DNA of 49,586 bases from NCBI RefSeq assembly GCF_006345805.1, contig NW_021834385.1:1-49586 (forward strand), in the 5' to 3' direction. The DNA comes from Octopus sinensis (Eukaryota). Positions 10,561 through 37,050 of this stretch are shown here, piece after piece (the first letter of the stretch is position 1; each line of letters begins with the position of its first letter). The notes below the pieces were generated by a model that had not been told where the DNA came from, did not search any database, and saw only the letters and a list, made by a program, of their open reading frames with translations. The translations under genes and the position numbers were made by a program.

Positions 10561-10588
10561 GTAATAATAATAAAATAATAATAATAAT

Positions 10589-10635
<47 letters not shown>

Positions 10636-10668
10636 TAATAATAAAATAATAATAATAATAATAATAAT

Positions 10669-11356
10669 GGCACGATAGAGCTGCACAATATATTCACTGG
10701 TAATCTGTAAAAACCTGGATTTGCCCCATGAAAAAAACTGGTGGGAACACAAACCACTCCCAGTGCTTGAAAATGACCACATCTCACTCCTCTGGAACTT
10801 CACCATTCAAACTGACAGAAAGATAGATGCAAATAGGCCAGACATCATATTGAAAGACTTCAAACAAAGAACATGCCTCCTCATTGATATGACTGTCCCA
10901 ATTGATATAAACGTATCTGTCAAGACCTACCAAAAACTGAGCAAATATAAAGATCTTGAAATAGAAATCAGCAAAATGTGGAAGCTGAAGACTAAAACAA
11001 TACCTGTTGTCATAGGTGCCCTGGGAATGATAGCAAAAGGGGCTGATAGCTACCTAACTCAGATACCAGGAAACCCAAAAATGGCAGAAGTTCAAAAGAT
11101 AGTGCTCATGGGAACTGCTCATATCCTACGCAAAATACTCTCTATGTAACCTCAAGGTTTAAAACAACCATGATTTTCGGTTTAAAAAAAAAAAAAAACT
11201 TTTTTTTAGACATTCATTAGTACAACACCCCCACCCCCCAAATATATGGCACACTAGGCATAACAACAGCATGAACTTCCAACCCTGTTGTCTCTTGAGG
11301 TCTCTGGGTGAGACTTGGAGCCAACTTGTACAAATATAAAGCAAAAGTCAAACATA

Positions 11357-11357
<1 letters not shown>
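10669..11357 (+). mobile_element. 5'-truncated R4/Dong-like non-LTR retrotransposon, copy 1 (RLE domain and 3' UTR)
   Basis: ORF 10721-11149 with NRPDIIL...LLIDMTVP...KLSKYKDL (PD-(D/E)xK restriction-like endonuclease), flanked by (AAT)n on both sides. Confidence 0.88.
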
Positions 11358-11403
<46 letters not shown>

Positions 11404-11414
11404 TAATAATAATA

Positions 11415-11490
<76 letters not shown>

Positions 11491-11491
<1 letters not shown>

Positions 11492-12181
11492 GCACGATAG
11501 AGCTGCACAATATATTCACTGGGTAATCTGTAAAAACCTGGATTTGCCCCATGAAAAAAACTGGTGGGAACACAAACCACTCCCAGTGCTTGAAAATGAC
11601 CACATCTCACTCCTCTGGAACTTCACCATTCAAACTGACAGAAAGATAGATGCAAATAGGCCAGACATCATATTGAAAGACTTCAAACAAAGAACATGCC
11701 TCCTCATTGATATGACTGTCCCAATTGATATAAACGTATCTGTCAAGACCTACCAAAAACTGAGCAAATATAAAGATCTTGAAATAGAAATCAGCAAAAT
11801 GTGGAAGCTGAAGACTAAAACAATACCTGTTGTCATAGGTGCCCTGGGAATGATAGCAAAAGGGGCTGATAGCTACCTAACTCAGATACCAGGAAACCCA
11901 AAAATGGCAGAAGTTCAAAAGATAGTGCTCATGGGAACTGCTCATATCCTACGCAAAATACTCTCTATGTAACCTCAAGGTTTAAAACAACCATAATTTT
12001 CGGTTTAAAAAAAAAAAAAAAAACTTTTTTTTAGACATTCATTAGTACAACACCCCCACCCCCCAAATATATGGCACACTAGGCATAACAACAGCATGAA
12101 CTTCCAACCCTGTTGTCTCTTGAGGTCTCTGGGTGAGACTTGGAGCCAACTTGTACAAATATAAAGCAAAAGTCAAACATA

Positions 12182-14623: not shown

Positions 14624-14642
14624 TAATAATATAATAATAATA

Positions 14643-14738
<96 letters not shown>

Positions 14739-14750
14739 TATAATAATAAA

Positions 14751-20039: not shown

Positions 20040-21480
<1,441 letters not shown>

Positions 21481-21600: not shown

Positions 21601-22284
21601 AATCTATCGACCCGGCACAGAAAAGCTAATCGACCCGGCATCACCGACCGCTCTTTGTACGGTTACACTTTGGACGCCATATTGTTTCAACTGCCGAACA
21701 ACCACGCAACGACCGTCGGCTCTTTACCAATCTCACCACTCCGCTCAACGTCCACCACCACAACCACCACCACTGCAACAACAACAATATCACCAGTTAA
21801 ACCTACCTACAACAAAATAAAGAAAAAGGAAGGTAAAAAAAACGGTGGTAGTTGCCACAAGAACAACAAAACCAATTATTCGAGGAAGGACGGAATATAT
21901 TACGTAAAACAACTCTCCTTTCATAACAAAAGGATTATAACAAACCCCTGGACAATAACAATAACAACAACCTTATTCAGATTGAAAGAAAGAAAGAAAG
22001 TCAACAATATAAGCGTCAAAGGTTTTCGCTAACAAAAAAAAAATAAAGAAGAAAATTAAAAAAACAAAACAGTGGTATAATCAAATAATGAATAAATAAA
22101 TAAATAACAGTGTAGTGTTTGCTAAAATATAGAACAATAACGACAACAACAACAACAATAATAATATTATAAGCAGCGCCACCCCATTCAGGAAACTTAA
22201 ACAAACGAAAATGTATCGTCTGTTTCCGCCATGATGTTTGTACTCGCTGATTCCTAAAAGTCCAACTAACGACTAACAACAACA

Positions 22285-22334
<50 letters not shown>

Positions 22335-22698
22335 AGCTACTGCTGCTGCTGCTGCTGCTGTTGTGGGGTGAAGGTCGTACCTGTTGAAAAACCAGATAAA
22401 GAAAGACCTCGTGCACCAGGAAGCGGAAGAACAACAGCAGCAATAACAACAACAAATGCTAGCAATATTGAACTGTAATAACAACAACAATAACAAAAGC
22501 AACGTGAGTAGTAGCAACAACAACAACAACAACAACAATATCCGCAGTGACTACTGCTGCAACAACCACGCCACCACTCTCACCTCTGTCACTAGCGCCG
22601 CCTACAGCAACCGAAGAGGACAACAACAACAGCAGCAGCAACATTTAATGGAACGATAAACTGTTGAATATTCTGTCGCCGGAAGTTGACAACTACTT

Positions 22699-22739
<41 letters not shown>

Positions 22740-23170
22740 AGAAACTGTAAGATCATCATCATCTTCACCCTCAGCAGCAGCAGCAGTAGTTGAAACAACC
22801 ACAGCAACAGCAACAGCAGCAGCAGCAGCAGCAGCAGCAAAAACACCAGCAGTTCCGCAAGAATTACATAAATGCTCTGGTTTCGTTCGCAACAAAAACA
22901 ACGACTACAAACGGCGGGCGTTGCGAATATAATAAGAATTACAACAGCAAAAAGCAGGAATTAATATTGCATGGAAAGTGACTTCGCAACAGGTCTAGTT
23001 CTCGCAACACCAGCGTAACCAATCGCAACAACAACAACAACGATAACAACAAGCAGGATGTAATTAGCAACAACGACAAGAACAAAGTTGATAACTGCTA
23101 GAAACGCTTTCTTTTTAGCAAAAACAATAGCGTTCCGCCATTTGACTACTACTACTAGTAGTACTACTGC

Positions 23171-23204
<34 letters not shown>

Positions 23205-23513
23205 ACTGCTGCTACCGCTGCTGCTGCTGCTGCCACTGTTGCTGTTGATGCTGCTGTGATATAAATACAGTCGCAAGAAGCGGAGACAATAAGAGATGAA
23301 ATAATAGAATAACTGTTACTCACAGTGCAACGGCATCGGCGACAACAACAACAACAACAACAATAAAAACGATAGCAGCTATAACTACAACAACAACAAC
23401 GCAAGACTTAAGTTCCTTTATCTCTTTATACCAAACCTAAATTAAGAACTCAGCCACAATAACAGCGCTTAATACTGTTAGTAACAGCTACTACTACTAC
23501 TACAACAACAACA

Positions 23514-23547
<34 letters not shown>

Positions 23548-23801
23548 AGAAACGCAACAATTTGTCTCCGTTTTCTTTTCTGTAATGTCAGCCAGTTTTA
23601 TCAGCTTAACACCGCCACCACCATCTCCGCCGCCTGGACCTCCACCACCACCGACGACAGCGACACCAATAGCATCCCCACCGTCACCCCAACGCAACCG
23701 CGAAAACCAAGAAAATTCGACGCCATGACAAGAAGAAGAAAGCGATTCGCTCATTACGCTCTCAAGTCCGTGTAAGGACTTTTGGTACAACTACCACTAC
23801 C

Positions 23802-23862
<61 letters not shown>

Positions 23863-24021
23863 AACGTATCGTTCTTTTTTTTCCTATCTTATAACTGCTT
23901 CCGGTTTTAGTAGCAAACTTCAGTAGTATCACCTTTGTGTTGTTGTTGTGGTGGTGGTGGTAGTAGTGGTCGTAGTTGTGGTCGTCGGAAGAGTCCGTCT
24001 TATGGACCGGCACAACGGGGT

Positions 24022-24380
24022 ATGGTACTGTTGTGGAGGCGGCGGCTGCAACGACGGAGGCGCTCGAAACAAAACAGCGTAAGAGGCTTGCGGCCGGAAA
24101 CGAGGCGACGGGACGGCCATAGAGGAAAAAGGGACGAAACAGCGACGGAGACACCATCTTGTGTTAACAACTACTCCTCCTCCTGCTCATCCCCCAACTC
24201 TTCTTTTTCTTTTTCCTTCTTTTCCTCTTCTTTATCCTACTTCTTCTCCTCATCATCCTCCGCCTCACCCTCCGGGCTATCCTCGGCTGCCGCGACAGCA
24301 CCACCGGCGACAGAATCATTGCTAACAACAACAGCAGCAGCAGCAGCAGCAGCAGCAACAGCAACAGCAGCAGCAACAGT

Positions 24381-24428
<48 letters not shown>

Positions 24429-24587
24429 AGCAGCCGTAGCAACGCGCCTACGTCCACCGCTGACACAAACGTCCTTTGCGGCATTAACACCTTCATCATC
24501 GCTGTTACAGCCGTTGTCCACCACCGAAACACTAGCAACAACACCAACCACTACACCTCCTGCACTACTACCACCAACACCGGCAGA

Positions 24588-24622
<35 letters not shown>

Positions 24623-24714
24623 ATAGAGAAGCAACAACAAACACTGCCCCAATCATCGCAACAACCACTGCCACCACTACTACAACTAACTGCATAAATT
24701 CTACTGCTTATAAA

Positions 24715-24791
<77 letters not shown>

Positions 24792-27700
24792 CACTACTAC
24801 TACTACTAGCACCACAACGGCGTCGGCGACGACGAGGACCACAACAGTGAGGACAGGACAAATTCCGCTGGTGTTAGCAACAACGTCGACGAAAGTGCCA
24901 AAGACCAAGTCGATAAAGAAGAGAAAGAAGAAGAAGAAAAAGAAGAGGAAGAAAAAGACCAAGTGGAAAGGGACCACGCTTAACTCGGCATCGAAATCGA
25001 AAGTTAAAGTCCAAACAGATGAAACGAAATTAAAAGGGTCGCATAGATTGCAGAGTTGCAACAGGGGACATAGTAGCGGAGTATTAAAGGATAAACGGCC
25101 GGGAACCGATAACTTTGATCCCAACTCCAAAAAGTCGCGTTGTTTTAAGCATCACCGCAAAAATATCGTAAATAAAGATTTGCCGAAGAAGAAGAATGGG
25201 AAAAGATTCGCTTCGAATAGAAAGAAAAAGCCGAGAAAACGAGAATCAACGAGACGTGTAGACGAAAAAGTAGAAGCATCTAACCGAAAGACTTTGGTTG
25301 CATTCTGGTTGGAGGCGACAAAGAATTGGTTATTAAAAGAAACTAGAATTTATGAAGGCAAGTACAAAATAGAAGATAGCGGAGTGGTGGATTTACAGCG
25401 AAAACTCGCAAAGTCAGCGAAATATGAGCTGATAAGTGTTACGAAAAAGAATATTAAAAATCGTAACAGTAAAAATATTAAAAAGAATAAGAAAACGAAA
25501 ATATCGAAAATAATAAAAAGGAGAGAGAAAATAAATTCAAGAGAATTGAGAATAAAAGACCCCAAAGCAAGGAGAAACGCAGAAAGAATAACACGAAAGA
25601 GGAACGTGGAGAGGAAAGACATAAAGTTTGTGGCGTCTTTCGTTAGATCAAGTTTAAGCCAAAACGATTCTTTGGCGTTCTTGAAGACATTTCATACATC
25701 CGTTTCACAACCGGAGCTGGAAAGGTTGTCAACGGAATTGTTATCTAACTGCAAAAGGGAAAAATTGCAACTGCTTCAAGTGGCAGCGACAATTAACATC
25801 AACGCTACAACAACAGCAACAACAATAACAAACACCACCACCACAACAACAACAAAAAACACAACAAACACCAGCAACAACAACAACAACAACAATACTA
25901 CAACAATAACATTCACAACCGCATTCACGAACACAGCTGCATTTTCTTCAACAATTCCAAGAATACCTAGTGAAACCATTATATGTATTAAAGTGTCAAC
26001 AACAACAACAACAACAAAAACAACAACAGAAACAACAACAACAAAATCAGCATTAGAAACAACATCAAAAAAAGCATTAGTTGTTATTCTGCTTTTAGTC
26101 GATTTGTACGCTTCGATATCATCGCGACAGTTTTATCAAAAGCATGTACAAAGCCACCAACATTATCACCTAGCATCACTACCACCTCTACTTTTACTTC
26201 TACTACCACCACAGTTACTACTACTATTACTACTACTATTACTTCTACTACTACAACCACTATTACTTCTACTACTAATACTACCACTACTACTACTAGA
26301 ATTGTTAGTAAGTGAAGCACTCCAGTCTCGACACTTACAACTACTACTTCTACCACACCTACAACTACCACTATTGCTACTAGTGCAATCATCACTACAA
26401 TTATTGTTACCAATATTACAAATACTACCTCTTTTCTTATTACTACTACTTATTCTACTACCTATACTACTACTACTCTTGTTACCTTTATTAGCTTTAT
26501 TTCTATTACTACTACTACGATTTCTATTTCTAGAATTTCAAGCACGGACAACACTATTACTGCAACTACTACTACTACTACTACCACATCAACCGCAACT
26601 TACCGCAGTAGTATTAGTTGCAGTAAGAAGTGGTGGTCACGTGACCGGCGTAAACTTTGCTCAAGCCGGAACGAGGCTTGGGTGGACGAACGGAAAGGAT
26701 CCAACGCGATTAACAAGAAGTTATTGTTATCTACATCATCCTCATCCTCCTCCTCCTCTTCCTCTTCCTCTTCCTCCTCCTCATCATCATTACCATCAAC
26801 ATTATCAGTGCCATCACTACCACTACAATTACTATCATCATCATCAGCATCATCATCGTCATCATCATCATCACCATTGTCATCGTCGTCATAAGAATCC
26901 CCAGCAGAATTATCTAATACGCCATTTTTATCATCATCATTGTCATTATCATCATCATCATCATCGCCGCCTGCAACAGCAGCAACAGCAGCAAATACAT
27001 CAGCATCATCAGCATCATCACCATCGTCATCATTACCAACGTTGCTGTCATCGGCAGAGAAATACGAGGCTGACATTTTGGATAACTGCGTCAGCGAATT
27101 ATAGGTTTGTACTCCGAGTAATACTTGTACAGTTACAACCACCTTCACAAAAACAACAACAACAATTACAATCACCGCAATCACTAGCTTCAATATTATT
27201 GTCCCCATTACGAATAACAACAAAAACAACGACGACGACGACGACGACAATAACAACAACAGCACAATCGTTGACAAGTCAACCATTGCAACAACAGCAA
27301 CAACAAGTATTGCCCCAGCCAGAACTATTGTTTTTCCTACTAAAATTATTACTACGCCCATCGCTACAACAATCGCCATCAACATCACCACCATCACCTT
27401 CACAACAACACCAACAAAACCGATTAATACTACTGCTGCAACTTTTACTACTATTACTACCACTTTTACAGCAACAACAACCACTACCACTACTACTACT
27501 ACTATTACTGCTACTATCATTATCATCATCATTACAATCAAAAGAACAGCAACGACCTCATGCATTACCACTACGACGAATACTACTACTGCTATTACCG
27601 CTACTACTACTAATACATAGACCACTACCTTCATCCCCCCATCAGTTGCTATTACCACGACTACTAAAACTACTATCTAAGCCACTTTTACTACTTATAT

Positions 27701-28542
27701 TACCACTACTACCACTTATACTGTTAAAACTACTTCGACCGCAACAAACACAGCAGCAATTGTTACAACGACAACAACCACAAATACTACAGCCGCTACT
27801 GACATCTCTACCACGACGACGACTACCACCACTACTACTACCACCACAACTATTAACGTTAATAATACTACTATTAATACTGTTACTACTACGAACAAAA
27901 GACTTAGTTCCCCTACAAGTAATATCACCAATTCTCTTAAATACATTATCATTCTCAGCGTCGTTGAAGACGCCATTGTCACAGTCTGTACTGCTACTAC
28001 TACCACTACTACACCTTCTCTTACTACCACCAAAACTACCTCCTTTACGACCACCACAGCGATCGCTGCTGCAGCTGCTGGTGTTGTTGTTGTTGTTATT
28101 ATTATTATTATTACGAACGACTTTCGATACGGCAGAAGGAAAAAGTTGTGGAGTTATTAGTGATAGAATTGGGCAGATTAAAGAAAAGAAGAGAGAAAGA
28201 AGGACAAGGAGAGAGAAAAGAGAAAAGAAAGGAGAGAAAGAAGCGGGAAGGAAGGAAGGTAAAAAGGGAAACAAAGCGGAAGTGGGAAAGCAGAAGAGGA
28301 AAGAAGGAAAAGAGAAGAGAAGCCAGAAAAACGAGAACAACCACAACAACAACAAGAACGAGAACAGCAACAACAACAACATCCTCATCATCATCAACAA
28401 CATCAGCAACAATAATAACAACAACACACAAAACGAAAAAAGCAACGAAAGCATAAACTCAACACCAACTTCAACAGGATCATCAAGTGCTACAACTGTA
28501 GGACAAACCTTAACAGCCCCCACATTGGCGATACCAGCATAA
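24022..28542 (+). CDS. Long orphan ORF (1506 codons from ATG 24022): Thr/Ala-rich, Lys/Arg-rich, then Leu/His/Gln-rich; no recognisable domain
   Basis: The frame is open for 4.5 kb, including about 290 codons of non-repetitive A-rich sequence (24900-25780). The ATG context is ggtATGg. The second half may be an off-frame reading of triplet repeats. Confidence 0.35.
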
Positions 28543-28898
28543 CCGCAAGCAAGGAGCACAACCACCACATCAGCAACAACAACAGTCACAAAACAACAAT
28601 ATATATTGCAAGAAAAGTGAAAAGACAAGATTTACAGCAGTGATACTGGTGTCATAGTTATCATCACAATCGTCATCATCATCACCTCCAGCAACAATAA
28701 GAAGAACATTGCATAGACACATCCTGTGCACAGTCATTAATATTTAGGTATAAAGAGTAATTTTACGAGTATAGCTAAGTCTGTTCATTTATTTAGGCGT
28801 AAAGAGTAATTTTGGGGAGTATAGACCAGTCTATTCATCTATTTCGGAGTAAAGAGCAGAGTGTGGATTATCGATAAATTTGCTTATCTATGATCTAT

Positions 28899-29084
28899 CT
28901 TAACGGAATATCTTAGCGATCAGGTTTAACGGAATATCTTAGCGATCAGGTTTAACGGAATATCTTAGTGATCAAGTTTAACGGAATATCTTAGTGATCG
29001 GGTTTAACGGAATATCTTAGTGATCGGGTTTAACAGAATAGCTTAGGATCGGGTTTAACGGAATATCTTAGTGATCGGGTTTAA
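28899..29084. repeat. 26-bp minisatellite, 7 copies, preceded by ~2.4 copies of a 49-50-bp unit (28741-28860)
   Basis: Unit TTTAACGGAATATCTTAGTGATCGGG, contiguous with no spacers. Confidence 0.95.
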
Positions 29085-29345
29085 AGACAAACATTGATAA
29101 ATATTTCTTCGGTCTATTTATCAAGAAGAAAACACAAGGAAATAAATAAAAACAAGGTAAAACACATCAAGGGATTAGAAAAGCTATATAGACAACGAGG
29201 ACGGACTCATTGGAAGAATTTCGAGCGAAGAATTTAGGCAGTTTGCTACGTTTTACATGTTCCAAAACGCTTCCAAAACGAATACAAGTGTCTATTTTAT
29301 TGCATCGTCCTTTGCAGACGACGGTTGGAATTTAACCTCTGAGTT

Positions 29346-30176
29346 TTGGGTTTCAAACAATTCGAAATAGACAAGTGTAAAGAAGAATCGCTGGAGAGCG
29401 TTAAATTGGACGCAAGACGCAAACGGTTTAGTGTTCTGCTGAAAGGGAAACCCCATAAAAGAAAACTGGAGGAACGAAAAGAAAAACGGGAGGAGAAGCA
29501 ACAGCTTCTGCTTGACGAACAGGAAGCGGACAGCGTGTGTTTCGTTCGGGAGAAGGAGTACCCGTCCCCGCGAGTCGAGTTGGAGTTTCAGCTCCATGAG
29601 TTTCGGCACCCGTCAGTACAGCCATCAACAACAGCAGTACCATCATCAACAGCAGCAGCAACACCACCACAACCGACAGCAGTTTCGGCGACTGTTGCCG
29701 CTGCTGTTGCTGCTGCTACTAACAACACAGGCAGCAACAGCAGCAGTAGCTGCATTAGTATCATCAGCAGCAACAACAACAGCATCAGCAGCAGCAGTTT
29801 AACCAGTAGAGGAACGGCAACAACTCAACTGTACAGTCATCCACTGAGCAACGATGGCAGCAGCAGCAGCAACAACAACAACGGTAGTAGCAGCAGCAGC
29901 GACAATGTTAACAACAACAGCATTAATACCAGCAATAATGGTGGCAGCAGCAACAACAACAACAGTAATAGCAGCAGCTCCACCATTTTCCCCGTTGTCA
30001 CACCAACCACGGCTGCAAGTCCCGTTCGACCACGAAACTTGCAGCAGCAACCGCATCCTCAACAGGCCCCAAGCAACACATATTTTCAACAGCAGCAACA
30101 ACAACAACAACAACAACAGCAGCAGCAACAACAACAACAACAACACAACAACAACAACAACAACAACAGCAGCAGC

Positions 30177-30207
<31 letters not shown>

Positions 30208-30406
30208 GCAAAGACCACCTTTAAGTCAGACCCAAACGACGCCGATCCAATTAAAATCGCAATCCCAACAACAACTACAGCAACAACGCCAACACCTGAC
30301 TTACTTAACAACCAGCATCGTCGTACACCACCACAACAACAGCAACAACAACCGCAACCACCACAACAGCAACAACAACAGCAGCAGCAACAGCAACAAC
30401 AACAAC

Positions 30407-30466
<60 letters not shown>

Positions 30467-31905
30467 GCTGCAGCTGAAAAACATTGACAGACGATCCAAC
30501 AATCTCACAACTGCTTCTGCGATTAAGAATAACAGCAGCAGTAGTAGTAACAGAAGCACAAGCAGCAGCGCTAGCAGCCCTCACAACGACGCCATTTCAC
30601 CGTCTCACAACGCTGCCAGGAACGTTCTGGGTACAAGTGTGACCAAGTCTAACGCCACTGCCGCCAACAACAACGGTAGCAGGTGCGCTAACCAGGTGAC
30701 CACCACCACTCAGATGTCCTCGCAGACACCGGCCGTTTCATCGTCCGGTGCCCACAATCCGGTGCAGTCACCGGCGTTAGAACTGAGACGGCTGGTCCCG
30801 CAGCTGAAACCACCTTCGCGAAAGGTGTACCATCACCACCACTACTACAACCACAACCATCGCCATCATCAGCAGCAATCACACCAACAACTGCAGCGAC
30901 AGCAGCAGAAAAAACAACAGCAGCAGCTGCGCTTGCAATTGCAGCCGAGCAGCTTTCATGCTCAGTTTGAGGCGCAACGTCAACGGGTCCAGAACCCTCA
31001 GTTGACGGAAACGTCGCCGGCGGCAACAGCAGCAGCAGCATCAACACCACCACCACCACAACCACCACAACCACAAACACAACCAAATGCATTATCACAA
31101 CAACAACAACAGCAACAACAACAACCACCGGCACCGTCAAGACAACAACAACTGCAGCAACAAAAACAACAATTTCAATTGCAACTCTTACAAACACAAC
31201 CTCAGCCACAACCGCAAAAACAACCTCAACAACAACCACCTAAACAATCCCCATCACAGCAGCAGCAACAACAACAACAACAAAAACAACAACAACAAAC
31301 CTCAAATTACACCCAACAAAAAGAGCAACAAAAACAGCTACAACAACTACAACAACACAACAACAACAACAACAAAACTACCAGAACCAACATCAGCTTG
31401 GTTACAGCTATCCTCATTCGCCAAGCCAACAACAACAACAACAACAACAACAGCAAGCACAACAGACAGCCCCATCCCGACAACCCCCACCACCGCCACT
31501 ACCCCCGCCACAGCAACACCAACCACAACAACACTTGCAGCTCAGGTCGGCGACGGCAACCATCGCTGCAGCAACGGCAGCGGCCATAACGATCTCCTCA
31601 ATAGCATCGACAGTGACCCCGACAGAGACGATCACAACGACAACGACCACCACATCGACCGCAGCAATAAGAGACGCCACAGCGACAACGTCAGCAACGT
31701 TATCACCTTCATCAGCATCCATTTCATTAGTGTCATCATCATCCTCATCTTCATCGTTTTCACCTTGTCGGCAACATCCTTACCAAATTTCTAACTTTAG
31801 CTTTGTACAGAGTCCCTCGCATCTTCGTTCTCAGACACACAGCAAGCATAGCAGCAACAACCACCTCAACAGGCAACAACAACAACAACAATCACAACCA
31901 CAAAC

Positions 31906-31941
<36 letters not shown>
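29346..31941 (+). CDS. Probable upstream part of the same exon: polyQ/N/S/T/H/P low-complexity N-terminus, frameshifted in this sequence
   Basis: Protein-like readings (29346-30145, 30309-31357, 31358-31941) join the T1 frame if single missing A's in (CAA)n at ~31357 and ~31941 are restored. Reaching 29346 needs further indels at ~30145 and ~30300-30407. Confidence 0.55.
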
Positions 31942-32213
31942 CAACAACAACCGCAGCTATCAAAACAAACGCAAAACATTAACTTTACCAGTAATCCACT
32001 TTCTGGTACTCACCATCAACAAACGCAACAGCAACAGCAACAACAGCAACAACAACAACAACAACAGCCTCAGCCTCATCCGAAATCGTCAGAGGCGACC
32101 CAGGTTCAAAACTCATTCAATCCGGATAATTTACTGAATGATCGACTTGTTCAACTCCAACCTATAATATTTCCTAGCTACCGCCATCTTAATAGTAATA
32201 ATAACAACAACAA

Positions 32214-32246
<33 letters not shown>

Positions 32247-32337
32247 GCATCCTCACTCTCATCCTCATCACCACAACCAACAGCATTACTACTCGCATCA
32301 TGAACAACAACAACAACAGCAACAACAACAACAACAA

Positions 32338-32372
<35 letters not shown>

Positions 32373-33639
32373 GTTTCATGTGGAAAGGGAAAAAGAGAAG
32401 AGAAACAACGATGGCGGCAGCGACGAGAGAGAAGAGAAAGGAAGACAAAAAAGAAAAGATAAAGGGGAGAGAGAAGACGAAGATAGAGGAAGAGGAGGAG
32501 GAGGAAAGGAGAGAACTGATTACGACGATGACGAAGAAGATGATATGGAAGAGGAGAGAGAACAACAGCAACCGCTATTGTCTTCTTCGCCGCAGACACC
32601 ACCGAGCCACGAATATGATCTGGCAAACAGTATCTCCTGGTTTACGGCCAGCGAATCGTATGAGAGGCGAAACACGTCGTACAGCGGCATAGCTGCCTCT
32701 ACCATCACCAACATGTCTGAATTAGCAGATGGAAGTTGTTACAGCCTGTCCACACACCAAAATCCTACTCCGGCCTCCTGCAATGTGCTCACACCAGAAG
32801 CAGACAGCGATATCACGGAAAGTTTCCGTTCGGTTCGAGACGAACTGCTCACCGGTTCCACCGAATATCTACCGGCCACCGACGGAGGTTTCGGGTTTAC
32901 GTACGGAAGTGGTACGGGCAACCCTTTCGTGACAAGTGGCGGCGTTGTGACACAGGATCATCGACGTCGCAGTGGCGGTTCGCGCCTCGGTCTGGGCGGT
33001 TACCGTGCCACCAACACCGGCATCAATTCGACGGTTGCCGCCACCGCCGCTGCCGCAGCTGCACACGCCGCCGCAGCAGCCACTAACTCGTTGCTGCACC
33101 GACAACCTTACTACAGCGTCACTCCCACAACACCGGGGAGCCACTCACAACATCGCCATGGCTCACACATTTACGATGACACCGTGGTATTAAACGTTGG
33201 TGGAAAGATCTTCGAGACGCGTCGTGCCACCCTTTTCCGATTGCCAACCATGAAACTGGCCAACACCGAAGAAATGGAAAAATACTATAGACCAGAACGA
33301 CGCGAATATTTCTTTGATCGCGATTCTGAGGCCTTCCGGATCATCTTGAATTACTTGAGAACGGGCGAACTGCATGTACCAATGTGTATGTGTGGACCGT
33401 CCATTAAGACAGAGTTTGAATTCTGGGGAATTGAAGAACACGATATTGAACGCTGCTGTTGGACCCAATATAATACTTGGAATACCCAAAGTAAGTCTCT
33501 GGAGAAGCTAGAGTCTTTCCGGAAGACGTCATTACCCCAAAACGGTCTGATGAATGAAAGACGTCTCTCCTGCTGGACACGGTACAGGGCAAAAATATGG
33601 AGTTTTCTTAACGACCCGACATCGTCAAAATATGCTCAG
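31942..33639 (+). CDS. Shaw: Exon segment of a voltage-gated K+ channel, Shaw/Kv3-like, with low-complexity N-terminal region, T1 domain and pre-S1 linker
   Basis: Stop-free frame 31942-33639 containing VVLNVGGKIFET, EYFFDRD, ILNYLRTGELH, the Zn motif H-x5-C-x20-CC (HVPMCMCGP...FWG...ERCCW) and IWSFLNDPTSS. It ends at a consensus donor. The assignment is family-level only and orthology is not established. In-frame ATGs lie at 32545 and 32713. Confidence 0.88.
33175..33462 (+). other. T1 tetramerisation (BTB/POZ) domain with non-Shaker Zn2+ site
   Basis: Translation DDTVVLNVGG...HVPMCMCGPSIKTEFEFWGIEEHDIERCCW. CGP, FWG and CCW match Shaw-type T1 better than Shab or Shal. Confidence 0.9.
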
Positions 33640-33645
33640 GTAAGT
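33637..33645 (+). other. 5' splice donor (phase 0)
   Basis: CAG|GTAAGT is a perfect consensus, placed at the end of the pre-S1 linker. Coding character is lost and TATC/TGTC microsatellite starts about 75 bp later. Confidence 0.9.
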
Positions 33646-33720
33646 CCGAAACACGCAGTCTTTACAGCATGCACCTTTCGCCTTTCTTCTCTCTTTGCTT
33701 CTTACAATTTATCTATATAT

Positions 33721-33930
<210 letters not shown>

Positions 33931-33941
33931 GTCTGTCTGCC

Positions 33942-33998
<57 letters not shown>

Positions 33999-34815
33999 AT
34001 CTAAACTTTCGTTTTAGTTACCACCAGAAATGACGTAGAGAGTCGCCATTATTATTGCTGTTGTTGATGTTTCTTTTCCCTTCATTAACTTCTTCCTCCT
34101 CCTCTTCCTTTTCTTCTTCTTCTTCTTCTTCTTCTTCTTCTTCTTCTTCTTCTTCCTCCTCTTCCTCCTCTCCGTTTTCACTCCATCTTGTTCTACCTCT
34201 TTGTCTTCCACCACCACCACCACCCCTTCTAAAATGGTCACCCCAAAATTATCCAAATTATCCGAGAGTCCCCCCCACTCGGCCCCTAATACTTGCAAAC
34301 TCAAGAATGGCTATTTACCAATGTTTACAGTTTACTAGACGACTTGGTCAATGGAAGAACTGGTTGAGCAATGCCTTGAATAATTTTTACCATATTTACT
34401 TCAGTTTCGTTGCGACGCATCCAGAGATCGAATTCTTTTAGAATCATTAAAAGAGAAATCTTTCTCGCCCTTCTTGCGGTTTATAAAACACATACAACTT
34501 CTCTATAACGCCTGACCCAGTTGAATCTTTATGTTCAAACAGAAGCGATCATTATTAATGGTGTGCATAAACAAAGACTAGGATGTTACAGTGTGTAAGC
34601 GGAACAGTAAAAATATGTAAGACTTATCGAAAGTTTAACGAGCAATCTTTAAGCGCCGTTGTGGTTGTATTGTTGGAGTTGTTATCGAAATTTTGTGGTG
34701 GAGCTTTGATTCTTTAATGGAAACCAAATAATTCTTTGCAAGAATTCATATAATACATAAAATGAAGGTAATACACACACACACACAGACACACAGAGAC
34801 ACACAGACACACACA

Positions 34816-36299: not shown

Positions 36300-37050
36300 T
36301 TTACAGAATCTGTGTTGCGGTTCTTAAAATTCTTTTATGATAATCTACATAACTGCATTAGGGATTTTTACCGAAACTTCATTTTGACTCTTACGAAACT
36401 TTTAGATCACCGAAAAGCCTTCATTGTGAAATTTAAAGAAAAGGAACTATATATTGTTCTTAAAAAAAAGTCAATATGATCCTCACAAAATGTTTTGGAC
36501 CCCTAAAAACCCCTATACTGCGAAATTGAAAGCAGTATATTGATTCTTGAAAAATCAATACGATCCCTACAAAATGTCTTAGACCCTTAAAAATTTCTGC
36601 ATTGCAAAATTTAAATCGAACTGTGTATTGATCCATAAAAGAATCAATATGATCCTTTAAAAATCTTTTAGACCCTTAAAAATCCCTCAATTTTGAAATT
36701 GAAAAAGAATTATTTTAACCCTTAATAAACCTTCTGATCCTTACAAAATGTTTGGGATGTTTAAAAATGTGAAATTAAAAAAACTATTGTAATTTGAGAC
36801 TTATAAAAATCTTTATTGTGAAATAAAAGAAAAAAGGAATAATATTTTGACTCTTGAAATTATTGTGATCCTTACAAAACATTTTGTCCCCTTAAAAATA
36901 CCTGCCCTGTGAAATTGAAAGCAAATATTCTATTTTGATCATGAAACAATCTTACAAAAAAAAAACCCCAAAAGGAAGTTAACGTTTTGACTCTAAAATG
37001 TCTTTGCGATCTTTACAAAACTTATGGGACCCCTAAATCACCTTTATTAT
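36300..37050. repeat. Degenerate ~85-bp tandem repeat, about 8 copies
   Basis: GATCC(T)TACAAAATG...GACCCTTAAAAAT...GAAATTGAAA recurs at 36478, 36562, 36651, 36736, 36867 and 37008. Confidence 0.75.

What the first reader, a model, noticed from the sequence alone, without database searches (positions are those of the whole stretch)
29346..33639. Hidden giant polyQ/N-rich N-terminus on a Shaw-like K+ channel
Seen: the track splits this region into separate ORFs. Restoring one A at ~31357 and one at ~31941 (both CAACAACACAAC lesions) gives a continuous frame from ~30309 to the donor. The newly joined pieces read as natural protein (QNYQNQHQLGYSYPHSPSQQQ; QPQLSKQTQNINFTSNPLSGTHHQQ; SFNPDNLLNDRLVQLQPIIFPSYRHL). 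From ATG 30714 this places about 820 residues before T1. With 2-3 more indels (~30145, ~30300-30407) it is about 1,280. Established: vertebrate Kv3 N-termini before T1 are far shorter, although insect Shab has long opa-type tails. Inference: a Kv subunit carrying a huge prion-like disordered domain that could cluster channels, act in inactivation, or vary in repeat length. Alternative: translation starts at ATG 32545 or 32713 and the rest is 5' UTR.
Basis: partly seen in the sequence, partly recalled or inferred. Interest (0 to 1): 0.75.

Follow-up and report, generated by a model that had tools for sequence, protein, structure and literature searches.

The report
Broken polyQ reading frame before octopus channel
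The 3.2 kb in front of the first coding exon of an Octopus sinensis Shaw/Kv3-type potassium channel gene looks like a long glutamine-rich coding sequence leading into the channel, but four identical one-base slips break it, and without sequencing reads nobody can say whether these are assembly errors (giving a giant disordered channel head) or real breaks.

Summary
The window is Octopus sinensis contig VCDQ01004966.1. RefSeq starts the Kv model at ATG 32545. The T1 domain (33184-33456) is Shaw/Kv3-type, not Shab.

Upstream, 29343-32544 is far more ORF-like than its composition predicts. Only 4 frame switches are needed to cross it without meeting a stop, against 14 on average (minimum 8) in 300 local shuffles, 14 on its own reverse strand and 20 in a nearby repeat-rich control.

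CAACAACACAACAAC occurs exactly four times in the window, starting at 30138, 30400, 31350 and 31934. Each is a one-base phase slip inside a CAA tract, and each sits where the open frame drops by one.

The interpretation remains unproven:
- Both public annotations avoid the long frame.
- Three mollusc relatives have stops or non-coding DNA upstream of a start Met that aligns with 32545.
- ATG 30714 has weak context, and the frame is already uniquely open upstream of it, with no ATG.
- Similar one-base slips fill non-coding (AAT)n arrays.

No reads, cDNA or second cephalopod DNA could be reached. My estimates: real giant N-terminus broken by assembly error about 0.4, real recent frameshifts about 0.3.

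The parts
29343..30143 (+). Segment A: S/N/T/A/Q-rich open frame in frame 2 (267 codons), with no ATG.
   Evidence: Stops by frame 0/1/2 are 4/17/0, and P(any frame open) is below 0.0005 in shuffles. The 90-nt blocks are consistently open in frame 2. All three frames close just upstream, at 29333, 29340 and 29368.
30144..30145 (+). Slip 1: 'CA' where the tract has 'CAA', inside a 125-nt CAA/CAG array (30087-30211). The Q phase moves from frame 2 to frame 1.
30146..30405 (+). Segments B and C: the Q phase is frame 1 and then frame 0. A fifth -1 shift with no signature is needed somewhere here. Both frames 0 and 1 are open, so this stretch is uninformative.
30406..30407 (+). Slip 2: 'CA' inside a 104-nt CAA/CAG array (30364-30467). 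The Q phase moves from frame 0 to frame 2.
30408..31355 (+). Segment D: Q/P/H/S-rich open frame in frame 2 (316 codons). It holds the only in-path ATG, at 30714, which has weak context.
   Evidence: Stops are 7/12/0 and P(any open) is 0.0075. Frame 2 is uniquely open from 30423, upstream of the ATG.
31356..31357 (+). Slip 3: 'CA' in a short CAA tract (31350-31375). Frame 2 moves to frame 1. Unique sequence lies within 20-60 nt downstream.
31358..31939 (+). Segment E: Q/P then T/A/S-rich frame 1 (194 codons). This is the weakest link of the chain.
   Evidence: Stops are 3/0/5 and P(any open) is 0.15. Frame 0 is also open to 31791. The position-composition test did not favour frame 1.
31940..31941 (+). 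Slip 4: 'CA' at the end of a (CAA)11 tract. Frame 1 moves to frame 0, the T1 frame.
31942..32544 (+). Segment F: Q/N/H-rich and then E/K/R/D-rich stretch, in frame with T1 with no lesion between. There is no ATG in frame 0 after the stop at 31849.
   Evidence: Stops are 0/2/16. The O. vulgaris model reads 32374-32544 as coding. The acidic run straddles ATG 32545.
32300..32692 (+). Cluster of five frame-1 ATGs (32300, 32378, 32411 with a strong context, 32528, 32540), plus two more after 32545. All end at stop 32690, overlapping the annotated start.
   Evidence: This arrangement is awkward for a 5' leader but harmless if frame 0 is already being translated.
32545..33639 (+). Annotated first coding exon of the Shaw/Kv3-like channel (RefSeq XP_029656820.1). 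ATG 32545 has G at -3 and G at +4.
   Evidence: It is identical at protein level to O. vulgaris CAI9740499.1.
33184..33456 (+). T1 tetramerisation domain (BTB_2).
   Evidence: Pfam PF02214, E = 1.5e-24. The best solved relatives are Kv3.1 (E = 3e-28) and Aplysia Shaw T1, entry 3kvt (E = 2e-26).
33640..33645 (+). Splice donor CAG|GTAAGT at the end of the exon.
   Evidence: Crude donor score +8.6.
29797..32373 (+). Equivalent of the 'intron' in the O. vulgaris model. It removes almost the whole finding.
   Evidence: Joining 29596-29796 to 32374 onward reproduces the P0037 N-terminus with one substitution. Donor score is -10.5 and acceptor score is -0.9. The 12-nt direct repeat CAGCAGCAGTTT sits at both junctions.
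23914..28539 (+). Upstream 1,542-codon open frame (frame 0, ATG 24022) through low-complexity sequence. It is either a separate gene or the far 5' part of the same one.
   Evidence: It needs 0 frame switches against 42 in shuffles. RefSeq joins it to the finding in an 806-aa model spanning 24022-32319.
29141..29150 (+). Two overlapping AATAAA motifs about 600 nt after the stop of the upstream ORF. They are a possible poly(A) signal separating the two transcription units.
   Evidence: This is a consensus match only, and AATAAA is not enriched in the window.

Best explanation
The 3.2 kb upstream of the annotated start (29343-32544, + strand) is protein-coding-type sequence. It encodes a Q/N/S/T/P/H-rich, intrinsically disordered stretch that runs in register into the T1 exon of a Shaw/Kv3-type potassium channel subunit.

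In this assembly, single-base 'CA-for-CAA' slips in CAA microsatellites break the frame. Two more slips plus one unlocalised shift interrupt the longer version.

My preferred reading is that these slips are consensus errors of a long-read (PacBio) contig in pure AAN-type arrays. On that reading the real gene encodes a channel subunit with a very long disordered N-terminal extension hanging from the cytoplasmic T1 tetramer.

Shown here: ORF-likeness beyond composition, the slips and their positions, the Shaw/Kv3 identity of T1, and signs that coding extends upstream of ATG 32545.

Inferred, not shown: that the slips are errors, where translation starts, that the extension is made as protein, and any function.
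For: 1. ORF-likeness. The region needs 4 frame switches, against a mean of 14.0 (minimum 8) in 300 composition-matched shuffles, 14 on the reverse strand and 20 in the control region 21700-23913. Segment-wise shuffle tests agree.
2. Unique open frames.
3. Slip positions. All four copies of CAACAACACAACAAC in the window lie in this region. Each lies inside one of the intervals where the open frame must change, and each changes it by -1.
4. No stops in the Q phase. Interruptions of CAA/CAG tracts in that phase are CAT, CTA, AAA AAA, CTG and AAA here, so none is a stop. In the control region and in the off-phase tract of the upstream ORF they are TAA or TAG in 3 of 5 cases. None of about 1,069 codons on the path is a stop, so any loss of constraint must be very recent.
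5. Start site. ATG 32545 is preceded within 250 nt by five out-of-frame ATGs whose ORF overlaps it. An acidic run straddles it. The O. vulgaris model reads 57 codons upstream of it as CDS.
6. Error profile. Non-coding (AAT)n arrays of the same contig are perfect except for eight 1-nt indels and contain no substitutions. That is the error profile of a long-read consensus.
7. Separate transcription units. The upstream giant ORF ends at 28540 and AATAAA follows at 29141. The finding therefore need not belong to that gene.
Against: - No reads, cDNA or second cephalopod genome could be examined.
- The upstream 4.6-kb low-complexity ORF of the same contig has 29 homopolymers of 5 nt or more and 383 A-runs, yet no frame break, against 4-5 breaks in the finding. 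That gives P of about 0.03-0.09 under a uniform error rate. Restricted to CAA/CAG tracts the contrast is not significant (about 0.18, using the tract lengths).
- Slips 3 and 4 sit in short tracts next to unique sequence. Short-read polishing would normally fix these.
- The path has no satisfying start. ATG 30714 has weak context, lies downstream of stronger ATGs (29854, 29938), and is preceded by about 100 uniquely open codons with no ATG. Segment A has no ATG at all.
- Segment E is not significantly ORF-like.
- RefSeq and the O. vulgaris annotation do not use the long frame.
- Other molluscs start at the Met that aligns with 32545, with in-frame stops upstream (4-5 codons in two relatives, about 45 in the third).
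- No protein in the 5.8-billion-sequence collection matches any complex island.
Confidence: 0.4

Rival explanations
1. The slips are real. The upstream frame is a very recently disrupted relic of an N-terminal extension, or a weakly selected and frameshift-prone one. It now serves only as a 5' leader. The channel is made from ATG 32545, as RefSeq annotates, perhaps inefficiently because of the upstream ATGs.
For: - ATG 32545 has the best context of any ATG in the region (G at -3, G at +4).
- It aligns with the start Met of other mollusc Shaw-like proteins, and the downstream motifs sit at matching distances.
- Two of the relatives checked have in-frame stops 4-5 codons upstream of their Met.
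- One-base slips are common in non-coding (AAT)n arrays of the same contig but absent from the intact 4.6-kb upstream ORF. That is the pattern expected if slips are natural mutations removed only where selection acts.
- Slips 3 and 4 lie in contexts that polishing should have corrected.
- The path lacks a credible start codon.
Against: - With about 290 CAA/CAG codons each one C-to-T change from a stop, zero stops in about 1,069 relic codons limits the time since loss of constraint to roughly 1.4% divergence or less. This is my calculation from the codon counts, and it requires a coincidence of timing.
- All four or five shifts go in the same direction, whereas the non-coding AAT arrays show both insertions and deletions.
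- Five out-of-frame ATGs just before 32545 make a poor leader.
Confidence: 0.3
2. The open frames belong to a different, upstream low-complexity gene, as in the RefSeq model 24022-32319 (806 aa). Alternatively they are joined by real introns. In either case the pieces are exons of another protein, and the channel gene starts only near 32545.
For: - RefSeq annotates such a gene on the same strand, overlapping the finding.
- The upstream 1,542-codon ORF is of the same compositional kind.
- Segment A has no ATG, so it would need an upstream exon.
- Phase-compatible donor and acceptor pairs exist, for example 28258 with 29371 or 29617.
Against: - Frame 0 has no stop between 31852 and the T1 domain, so an upstream gene reading that frame cannot end before the channel.
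- The RefSeq model ends at 32319 on a CAG codon in the T1 frame, with no stop there.
- The frame changes lie in the middle of pure CAA tracts, not at splice-like sites.
- All three frames close between 28540 and 29342. That gap holds a 26-nt tandem repeat and AATAAA.
- The 806-aa protein could not be retrieved, and three reconstructed two-exon versions are not in the collection.
Confidence: 0.15
3. The region is plain non-coding, microsatellite-rich promoter or leader DNA. The long open frames are a by-product of T-poor, trinucleotide-periodic composition.
For: - T content is only 7-16%.
- CAA-type arrays are open in all three frames.
- The window holds many chance open stretches of 120-250 codons, and one of 402 codons in a CT repeat.
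- The block-phase test is only modestly significant, and segments B, C and E are uninformative.
- No homologue exists for any island.
Against: - Composition-matched shuffles never come near the observed 4 switches (minimum 8 of 300).
- The reverse strand needs 14 switches, and the repeat-rich control next door needs 20.
- The complex islands, not only the arrays, are open in a single frame.
- The Q phase lacks TAA/TAG interruptions here, but not in the control.
Confidence: 0.1

Closest known systems
Shaw/Kv3 voltage-gated K+ channel subunits (human Kv3.1/KCNC1; Aplysia Shaw T1, PDB entry 3kvt; mollusc 'Shaw-like' proteins)
   Same: - The T1 domain, with its H..C..CC zinc motif, matches best: E = 3e-28 to Kv3.1 and 2e-26 to Aplysia Shaw.
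- Mollusc Shaw-like proteins are 55-61% identical over T1 and the linker.
- The first coding exon ends at the same place, before S1.
   Different: - In Kv3.1 the T1 match starts at residue 8 of the chain.
- The mollusc relatives have about 84-190 residues before T1.
- The annotated octopus start gives 213 residues before T1. The proposed frame gives about 820-1,280.
- Only the T1 exon lies in this contig, so the pore and voltage sensor cannot be checked here.
Kv channels with glutamine-rich (opa-type) disordered termini, such as Drosophila Shab (recalled from memory, not tested here)
   Same: Low-complexity polyQ stretches sit in a cytoplasmic terminus next to T1, encoded by mixed CAA/CAG arrays.
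   Different: As far as I recall, the known examples are a few hundred residues at most. The one proposed here would be several times longer, and its frame is not intact in the only available assembly.
Frameshift artefacts of long-read assemblies in microsatellites and homopolymers
   Same: - The events are single-base, all deletions, and lie inside pure AAN-type arrays.
- Non-coding (AAT)n arrays in the same contig carry only 1-nt indels and no substitutions.
- The assembly is PacBio-based, according to the title of Li et al. 2020 as cited in PMC10700109. The contig is a stand-alone 49.6-kb record.
   Different: - There is no frame break in 5.7 kb of other open frame in the same contig, including 31 homopolymers of 5 nt or more.
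- Two slips lie in short, easily polished tracts.
- Whether this contig was short-read polished could not be established.
Long uORF-laden 5' leaders and alternative N-terminal starts of Kv3 channels (Kv3.3 has two start methionines; recalled from memory)
   Same: Several ATGs lie upstream of and overlapping the annotated start, and a second in-frame ATG follows at 32713.
   Different: The upstream sequence shows stop-codon avoidance in a specific frame path over 3.2 kb. Leaders do not show this.

Membership tests
Shaw/Kv3 subfamily of voltage-gated K+ channels | N-terminal T1 (BTB_2) tetramerisation domain of the non-Shaker, zinc-binding type | tested here: met
   PF02214, E = 1.5e-24, at 33184-33456. 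The sequence HVPMCMCGP...IERCCW is present.
Shaw/Kv3 subfamily of voltage-gated K+ channels | Closest relatives are Kv3/Shaw rather than Kv1, Kv2 or Kv4 | tested here: met
   E-values are 3e-28 for Kv3.1, 2e-26 for Aplysia Shaw, 1e-22 for Kv4.3, 4e-19 for Kv2.1 and 1e-12 for Kv1.1. The top collection hits are named Shaw-like. The RefSeq name 'Shab-like' is not borne out.
Shaw/Kv3 subfamily of voltage-gated K+ channels | Six transmembrane segments with an S4 voltage sensor and a GYG pore | not testable with these tools
   No 8-mer of the downstream exons of the O. vulgaris orthologue is in the window. That orthologue model reaches only about S2. Full-length mollusc relatives do carry PF00520.
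Translated polyQ/N-rich (prion-like) protein domain | High Q/N content over hundreds of residues | tested here: met
   The joined path has 293 Q and 78 N in 1,064 codons.
Translated polyQ/N-rich (prion-like) protein domain | One uninterrupted reading frame with a start codon | tested here: not met
   As assembled, the frame breaks at 4-5 places. The only in-path ATG (30714) has weak context, and the frame is open upstream of it.
Translated polyQ/N-rich (prion-like) protein domain | Evidence of transcription and translation | not testable with these tools
   No cDNA, read or peptide data could be reached. No protein in the collection matches the islands.
Long-read assembly indel artefact | Single-base indels confined to low-complexity arrays, with open frames on both sides | tested here: met
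Long-read assembly indel artefact | Accurate reads or an independent assembly disagree with the contig at those bases | not testable with these tools
   O. vulgaris DNA was not returned because the gene range exceeds 100 kb. None of the ten window ORFs looked up by exact sequence, among them those running through the slips, is in the collection.
Ordinary 5' untranslated leader | No frame-specific avoidance of stop codons, and few upstream ATGs | tested here: not met
   The region needs 4 frame switches against 14 expected. Five ATGs lie in the last 250 nt before the annotated start.

The most novel reading that the evidence does not exclude
The slips are assembly errors, and octopus neurons make a Shaw/Kv3-type channel subunit carrying an 800-1,300-residue glutamine/asparagine-rich disordered head on its T1 domain, four per channel. 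In the extreme version the frame is fed by splicing from the 1,506-codon upstream low-complexity ORF, giving close to 2,800 residues ahead of T1. Such a head could tether or cluster channels by multivalent low-complexity interactions, and it would vary in length through CAA/CAG slippage.
Probability: 0.3. Interest if true: 0.65.

Novelty: new variant of a known kind. Interest (0 to 1): 0.38.

Why it matters
If the frame is intact in the animal, this would be by far the longest N-terminal extension I know of on a Kv channel (from memory, not tested here). It would link a fast-spiking-type potassium channel to a prion-like, length-variable domain in an animal known for neural complexity. That would be a testable handle on channel clustering or regulation by disordered regions.

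If the slips are real, the locus is instead a rare snapshot of a coding extension within about 1% divergence of its death.

Either way it is a concrete warning for annotation. RefSeq splits the locus into a truncated channel model, misnamed Shab-like, and an 806-residue low-complexity 'gene' whose end lies in the channel's own reading frame.

Tried and rejected
**Searches that found nothing**
- Complex islands of the joined frame, with low-complexity parts masked by X, against the 5.8-billion-protein collection: no hit.
- The same for the upstream giant ORF: no hit. It is possible that the X-laden queries weakened these searches.
- Exact look-up of ten window ORFs: none in the collection.
- Three reconstructed two-exon versions of the 806-aa RefSeq model, taken from the 25 that fit the length: none in the collection. 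The RefSeq exon structure therefore remains unknown.
- The HMMER search of representatives with 24022-27621 was still running after more than 20 polls. It gave nothing.
- Pfam on all segments found only BTB_2. Rfam found nothing in the window.
- Literature searches for cephalopod Shaw/Kv3 or polyQ found nothing relevant, and the O. sinensis genome paper is not in the library.

**Data that could not be reached**

**Tests that were uninformative**
- Position-specific base composition, trained on the T1 exon, was meant to pick frames in the islands. The exon is barely periodic and a non-coding control scored +7.
- The bacterial promoter scan is irrelevant for a eukaryote.

**Ideas rejected**
- Introns rescuing the frame. 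There is no GT before the first frame-2 stop at 30222 that gives a clean splice. The good acceptor-like site at 29317/29318 is followed by stops in all three frames. The O. vulgaris 'intron' has very poor splice sites and a 12-nt direct repeat at both ends.
- A minus-strand gene. The reverse strand needs 14 switches, and its ORFs read as poly-L/V/C.
- A start at ATG 29854 in frame 0. It has a strong context, but it would need slip 1 to be real while slips 2-4 are errors.

Full report
**What the window is.** The T1-exon protein is identical to RefSeq XP_029656820.1 of Octopus sinensis, named 'potassium voltage-gated channel protein Shab-like', 371 aa. It is carried by a 49,586-bp contig, VCDQ01004966.1 of GCA_006345805.1, so the window is that whole contig.
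- The model starts at ATG 32545 and runs to the donor CAG|GTAAGT at 33639/33640. It then adds a six-residue terminal exon at 36307-36327.
- The real next exon (IYAWVSVMFV...) of the O. vulgaris orthologue is not in the window.
- The T1 domain lies at 33184-33456 (Pfam BTB_2, E = 1.5e-24). Its best solved relatives are Kv3.1 (3e-28) and Aplysia Shaw (2e-26), ahead of Kv4, Kv2 and Kv1.

**The observation.**
- Frame 2 is open 29343-30221 and 30309-31586. Frame 1 is open 31244-32134. Frame 0 is open from 31852 through the T1 exon.
- CAACAACACAACAAC occurs four times in the window and nowhere else, starting at 30138, 30400, 31350 and 31934. Each is a CAA array whose phase slips by one base.
- Restoring a base at 31357 and at 31941 joins 30309 to 33639. 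From ATG 30714 that is 822 codons before T1.
- Reaching back to 29343 gives 1,280 codons. It needs the two further slips and a fifth -1 shift somewhere in 30146-30400, which has no signature. That path has no ATG before 30714.

**Is it more than composition?** The region is very T-poor (7-16%), and CAA-type arrays are open in all frames, so long open stretches are cheap. The window has many of 120-250 codons. Three tests nevertheless say the region is ORF-like.
- Segment-wise dinucleotide shuffles give P(any frame open) below 0.0005 for 29343-30143, 0.0075 for 30408-31355 and 0.002 for 31942-32544. For 31358-31939 the value is only 0.15.
- The minimum number of frame switches needed to cross 29343-32544 without a stop is 4. 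The comparisons are mean 14.0 and minimum 8 in 300 shuffles that keep composition in 300-nt blocks, 14 on the reverse strand, and 20 in the similar repeat-rich region 21700-23913. The T1 exon and the upstream giant ORF need 0.
- In-phase interruptions of the CAA/CAG arrays here are CAT, CTA, AAA AAA, CTG and AAA, never TAA or TAG. In the control region, and in the off-phase array of the upstream ORF, they are TAA or TAG in 3 of 5 cases.
- A stricter argument from 90-nt blocks is more modest, about 0.03 and 0.02 for the two best segments.
- Segment 31358-31939, the link between the strong upstream piece and the T1 frame, is not significant alone.
- Subjective 'naturalness' does not help. In 31244-31586 all three frames read as plausible low-complexity protein.

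**Does the CDS really start at 32545?** The evidence points both ways.
- In favour:
  - This ATG has the best context in the region (G at -3, G at +4).
  - In an alignment of N-termini it lines up with the start Met of other mollusc Shaw-like proteins. The two basic motifs follow at similar distances, for example octopus RRNTSYSGI against RKRNTSVIGQ.
  - In three relatives whose genomic contigs I fetched, the frame upstream of that Met carries in-frame stops, 4-5 codons before it in two of them and about 45 codons before it in the third.
- Against:
  - Five ATGs in frame 1 (32300, 32378, 32411 with a strong context, 32528, 32540) lie just upstream. All run past 32545 to the stop at 32690.
  - An acidic run, DYDDDEEDD-M-EEERE, straddles the Met.
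  - Frame 0 is open for 231 codons before it with no ATG.
  - The O. vulgaris orthologue CAI9740499.1 reads 57 codons upstream of that Met as coding.
- I conclude that coding sequence probably extends upstream of 32545. Because frame 0 has no ATG after the stop at 31849, that requires either a repaired slip at 31941 or an acceptor site somewhere in 31852-32374. A start at 32713 is unlikely, because the conserved motifs lie upstream of it.

**What the public annotations do.**
- RefSeq places a second model, 806 aa with no Pfam domain, at 24022-32319 on the same strand, overlapping the finding. Its end falls on a CAG codon of the polyQ run in the T1 frame, with no stop there. The range of the neighbouring model does include its stop codon. 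I could not recover the exon structure of the 806-aa model.
- The O. vulgaris model comes from an ONT assembly with 10x linked reads. It was annotated by EVM/PASA with Iso-Seq, and ab initio prediction was run on repeat-masked sequence (PMC10700109).
  - It begins at the equivalent of ATG 29596 in frame 0 and splices 29796 to 32374, skipping the whole polyQ region.
  - That 'intron' has a very poor donor (score -10.5, against +8.6 for the true donor at 33639) and no pyrimidine tract. The same 12 nt, CAGCAGCAGTTT, sit at both junctions.
  - It therefore looks like a prediction or template-switching artefact rather than a real splice.
- Neither annotation supports the long frame, but neither is good evidence against it.

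**Errors or real slips?** This is the crux, and it cannot be settled here.
- For errors:
  - All four signature events, and the inferred fifth, go in the same direction.
  - All lie in pure AAN arrays.
  - No stop has arisen in about 1,069 codons of the path, although about 290 CAA/CAG codons are one transition from a stop. By my estimate, a real loss of constraint would have to be younger than about 1.4% divergence.
  - Non-coding (AAT)n arrays at 10.6, 11.4 and 14.7 kb are perfect except for eight 1-nt indels, with no substitutions. That is what a long-read consensus error profile looks like.
- For real slips:
  - The neighbouring 4.6-kb low-complexity ORF has 29 homopolymers of 5 nt or more and as many A-runs as the finding, yet no frame break. 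That gives P of about 0.03-0.09 under a uniform rate. The contrast fades to about 0.18 if only CAA/CAG tracts count.
  - This is the pattern expected if slips are natural and selection removes them only where a frame matters.
  - Slips 3 and 4 are in short tracts beside unique sequence, where short-read polishing normally works.
  - The joined frame never reaches a convincing start codon.
- I put assembly error with a real long extension at about 0.4, real recent disruption at about 0.3, a separate gene or real introns at about 0.15, and plain non-coding DNA at about 0.1.

**Surroundings.**
- The low-complexity, trinucleotide-rich tract runs from about 21.7 kb to 32.4 kb.
- Within it, 23914-28539 is a single open frame of 1,542 codons (ATG 24022). 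It has no homologue and no domain.
- It is followed by 800 nt that are closed in all frames. That stretch contains a 26-nt tandem repeat and two AATAAA motifs at 29141/29145.
- This suggests a separate orphan gene ending there, with the finding belonging to the channel's transcription unit. A single giant gene cannot be excluded.
- The minus strand shows nothing gene-like. Rfam finds nothing.

**Comparison and novelty.**
- The channel is an ordinary member of the Shaw/Kv3 family by its T1 domain.
- In Kv3.1 the T1 match starts at residue 8. The mollusc relatives have 84-190 residues before T1. An 820-1,280-residue Q/N-rich head would be a new variant of a known kind.
- It resembles in style the opa-type glutamine tracts recalled for Drosophila Shab (from memory, not tested), but it would be several times longer.
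- Functions such as clustering or modified inactivation are pure inference.

**Verdict.** Interest is moderate.

Noticed in passing
window 23914-28539 (+): A 1,542-codon uninterrupted open frame (ATG 24022) runs through T-, L-, K-, H-, Q- and N-rich low-complexity sequence. It needs 0 frame switches, against 42 in shuffles. It has no Pfam domain and no homologue. Parts of its translation, such as the long poly-L, look unnatural, yet both other frames are full of stops.
   Followed up: partly
window 24022-32319 (+): A RefSeq 806-aa model joins the giant ORF to the finding region. It ends, without a stop codon, on a CAG of the polyQ run in the T1 reading frame. This suggests one locus was split into two models. 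Its exon structure could not be recovered.
   Followed up: partly
window 10570-10672, 11354-11494, 14627-14742: These (AAT)n arrays are perfect except for eight single-base indels, and they have no substitutions. Two of them end in the same AATGGCA. Either long-read consensus errors or a high natural slip rate could explain this. It bears on how far to trust any microsatellite phase in this contig.
   Followed up: partly
window 28900-29084: A 26-nt tandem repeat (TTAACGGAATATCTTAGTGATCGGGT, about 7 copies, 93% matches) lies between the giant ORF and the finding. Two overlapping AATAAA motifs follow at 29141-29150.
   Followed up: no
window 29290-29318: There is a strong acceptor-like site, tctattttattgcatcgtcctttgcag|AC. 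All three frames hit a stop within 50 nt after it. If it is used, it would begin a non-coding (5'UTR) exon.
   Followed up: partly
window 36307-36327: The last exon of the RefSeq channel model (NLCCGS*) is a stop-gap. The true S1-encoding exon seen in O. vulgaris is not on this contig, so the RefSeq protein is a truncated T1-only product and its 'Shab-like' name is wrong.
   Followed up: yes
window 20349-21258 and 33720-34002: Long dinucleotide arrays, (CT)n at 20362-20902 and (AC)n at 21066-21258, flank the low-complexity tract. A (TCTG)n array of about 70 copies begins 80 nt into the intron after the T1 exon.
   Followed up: no
L002 (Logan SRR29346471), L003/L004, L005: These genomic contigs from unidentified molluscs carry Shaw-like T1 exons. 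Their start Met is preceded by in-frame stops: 4-5 codons upstream in L003/L004 and L005, and about 45 codons upstream, in AT-rich sequence, in L002. L002 shares the octopus-specific TQYNTWNTQSKSLEKL string and has only 84 residues before T1. Its species is unknown.
   Followed up: partly
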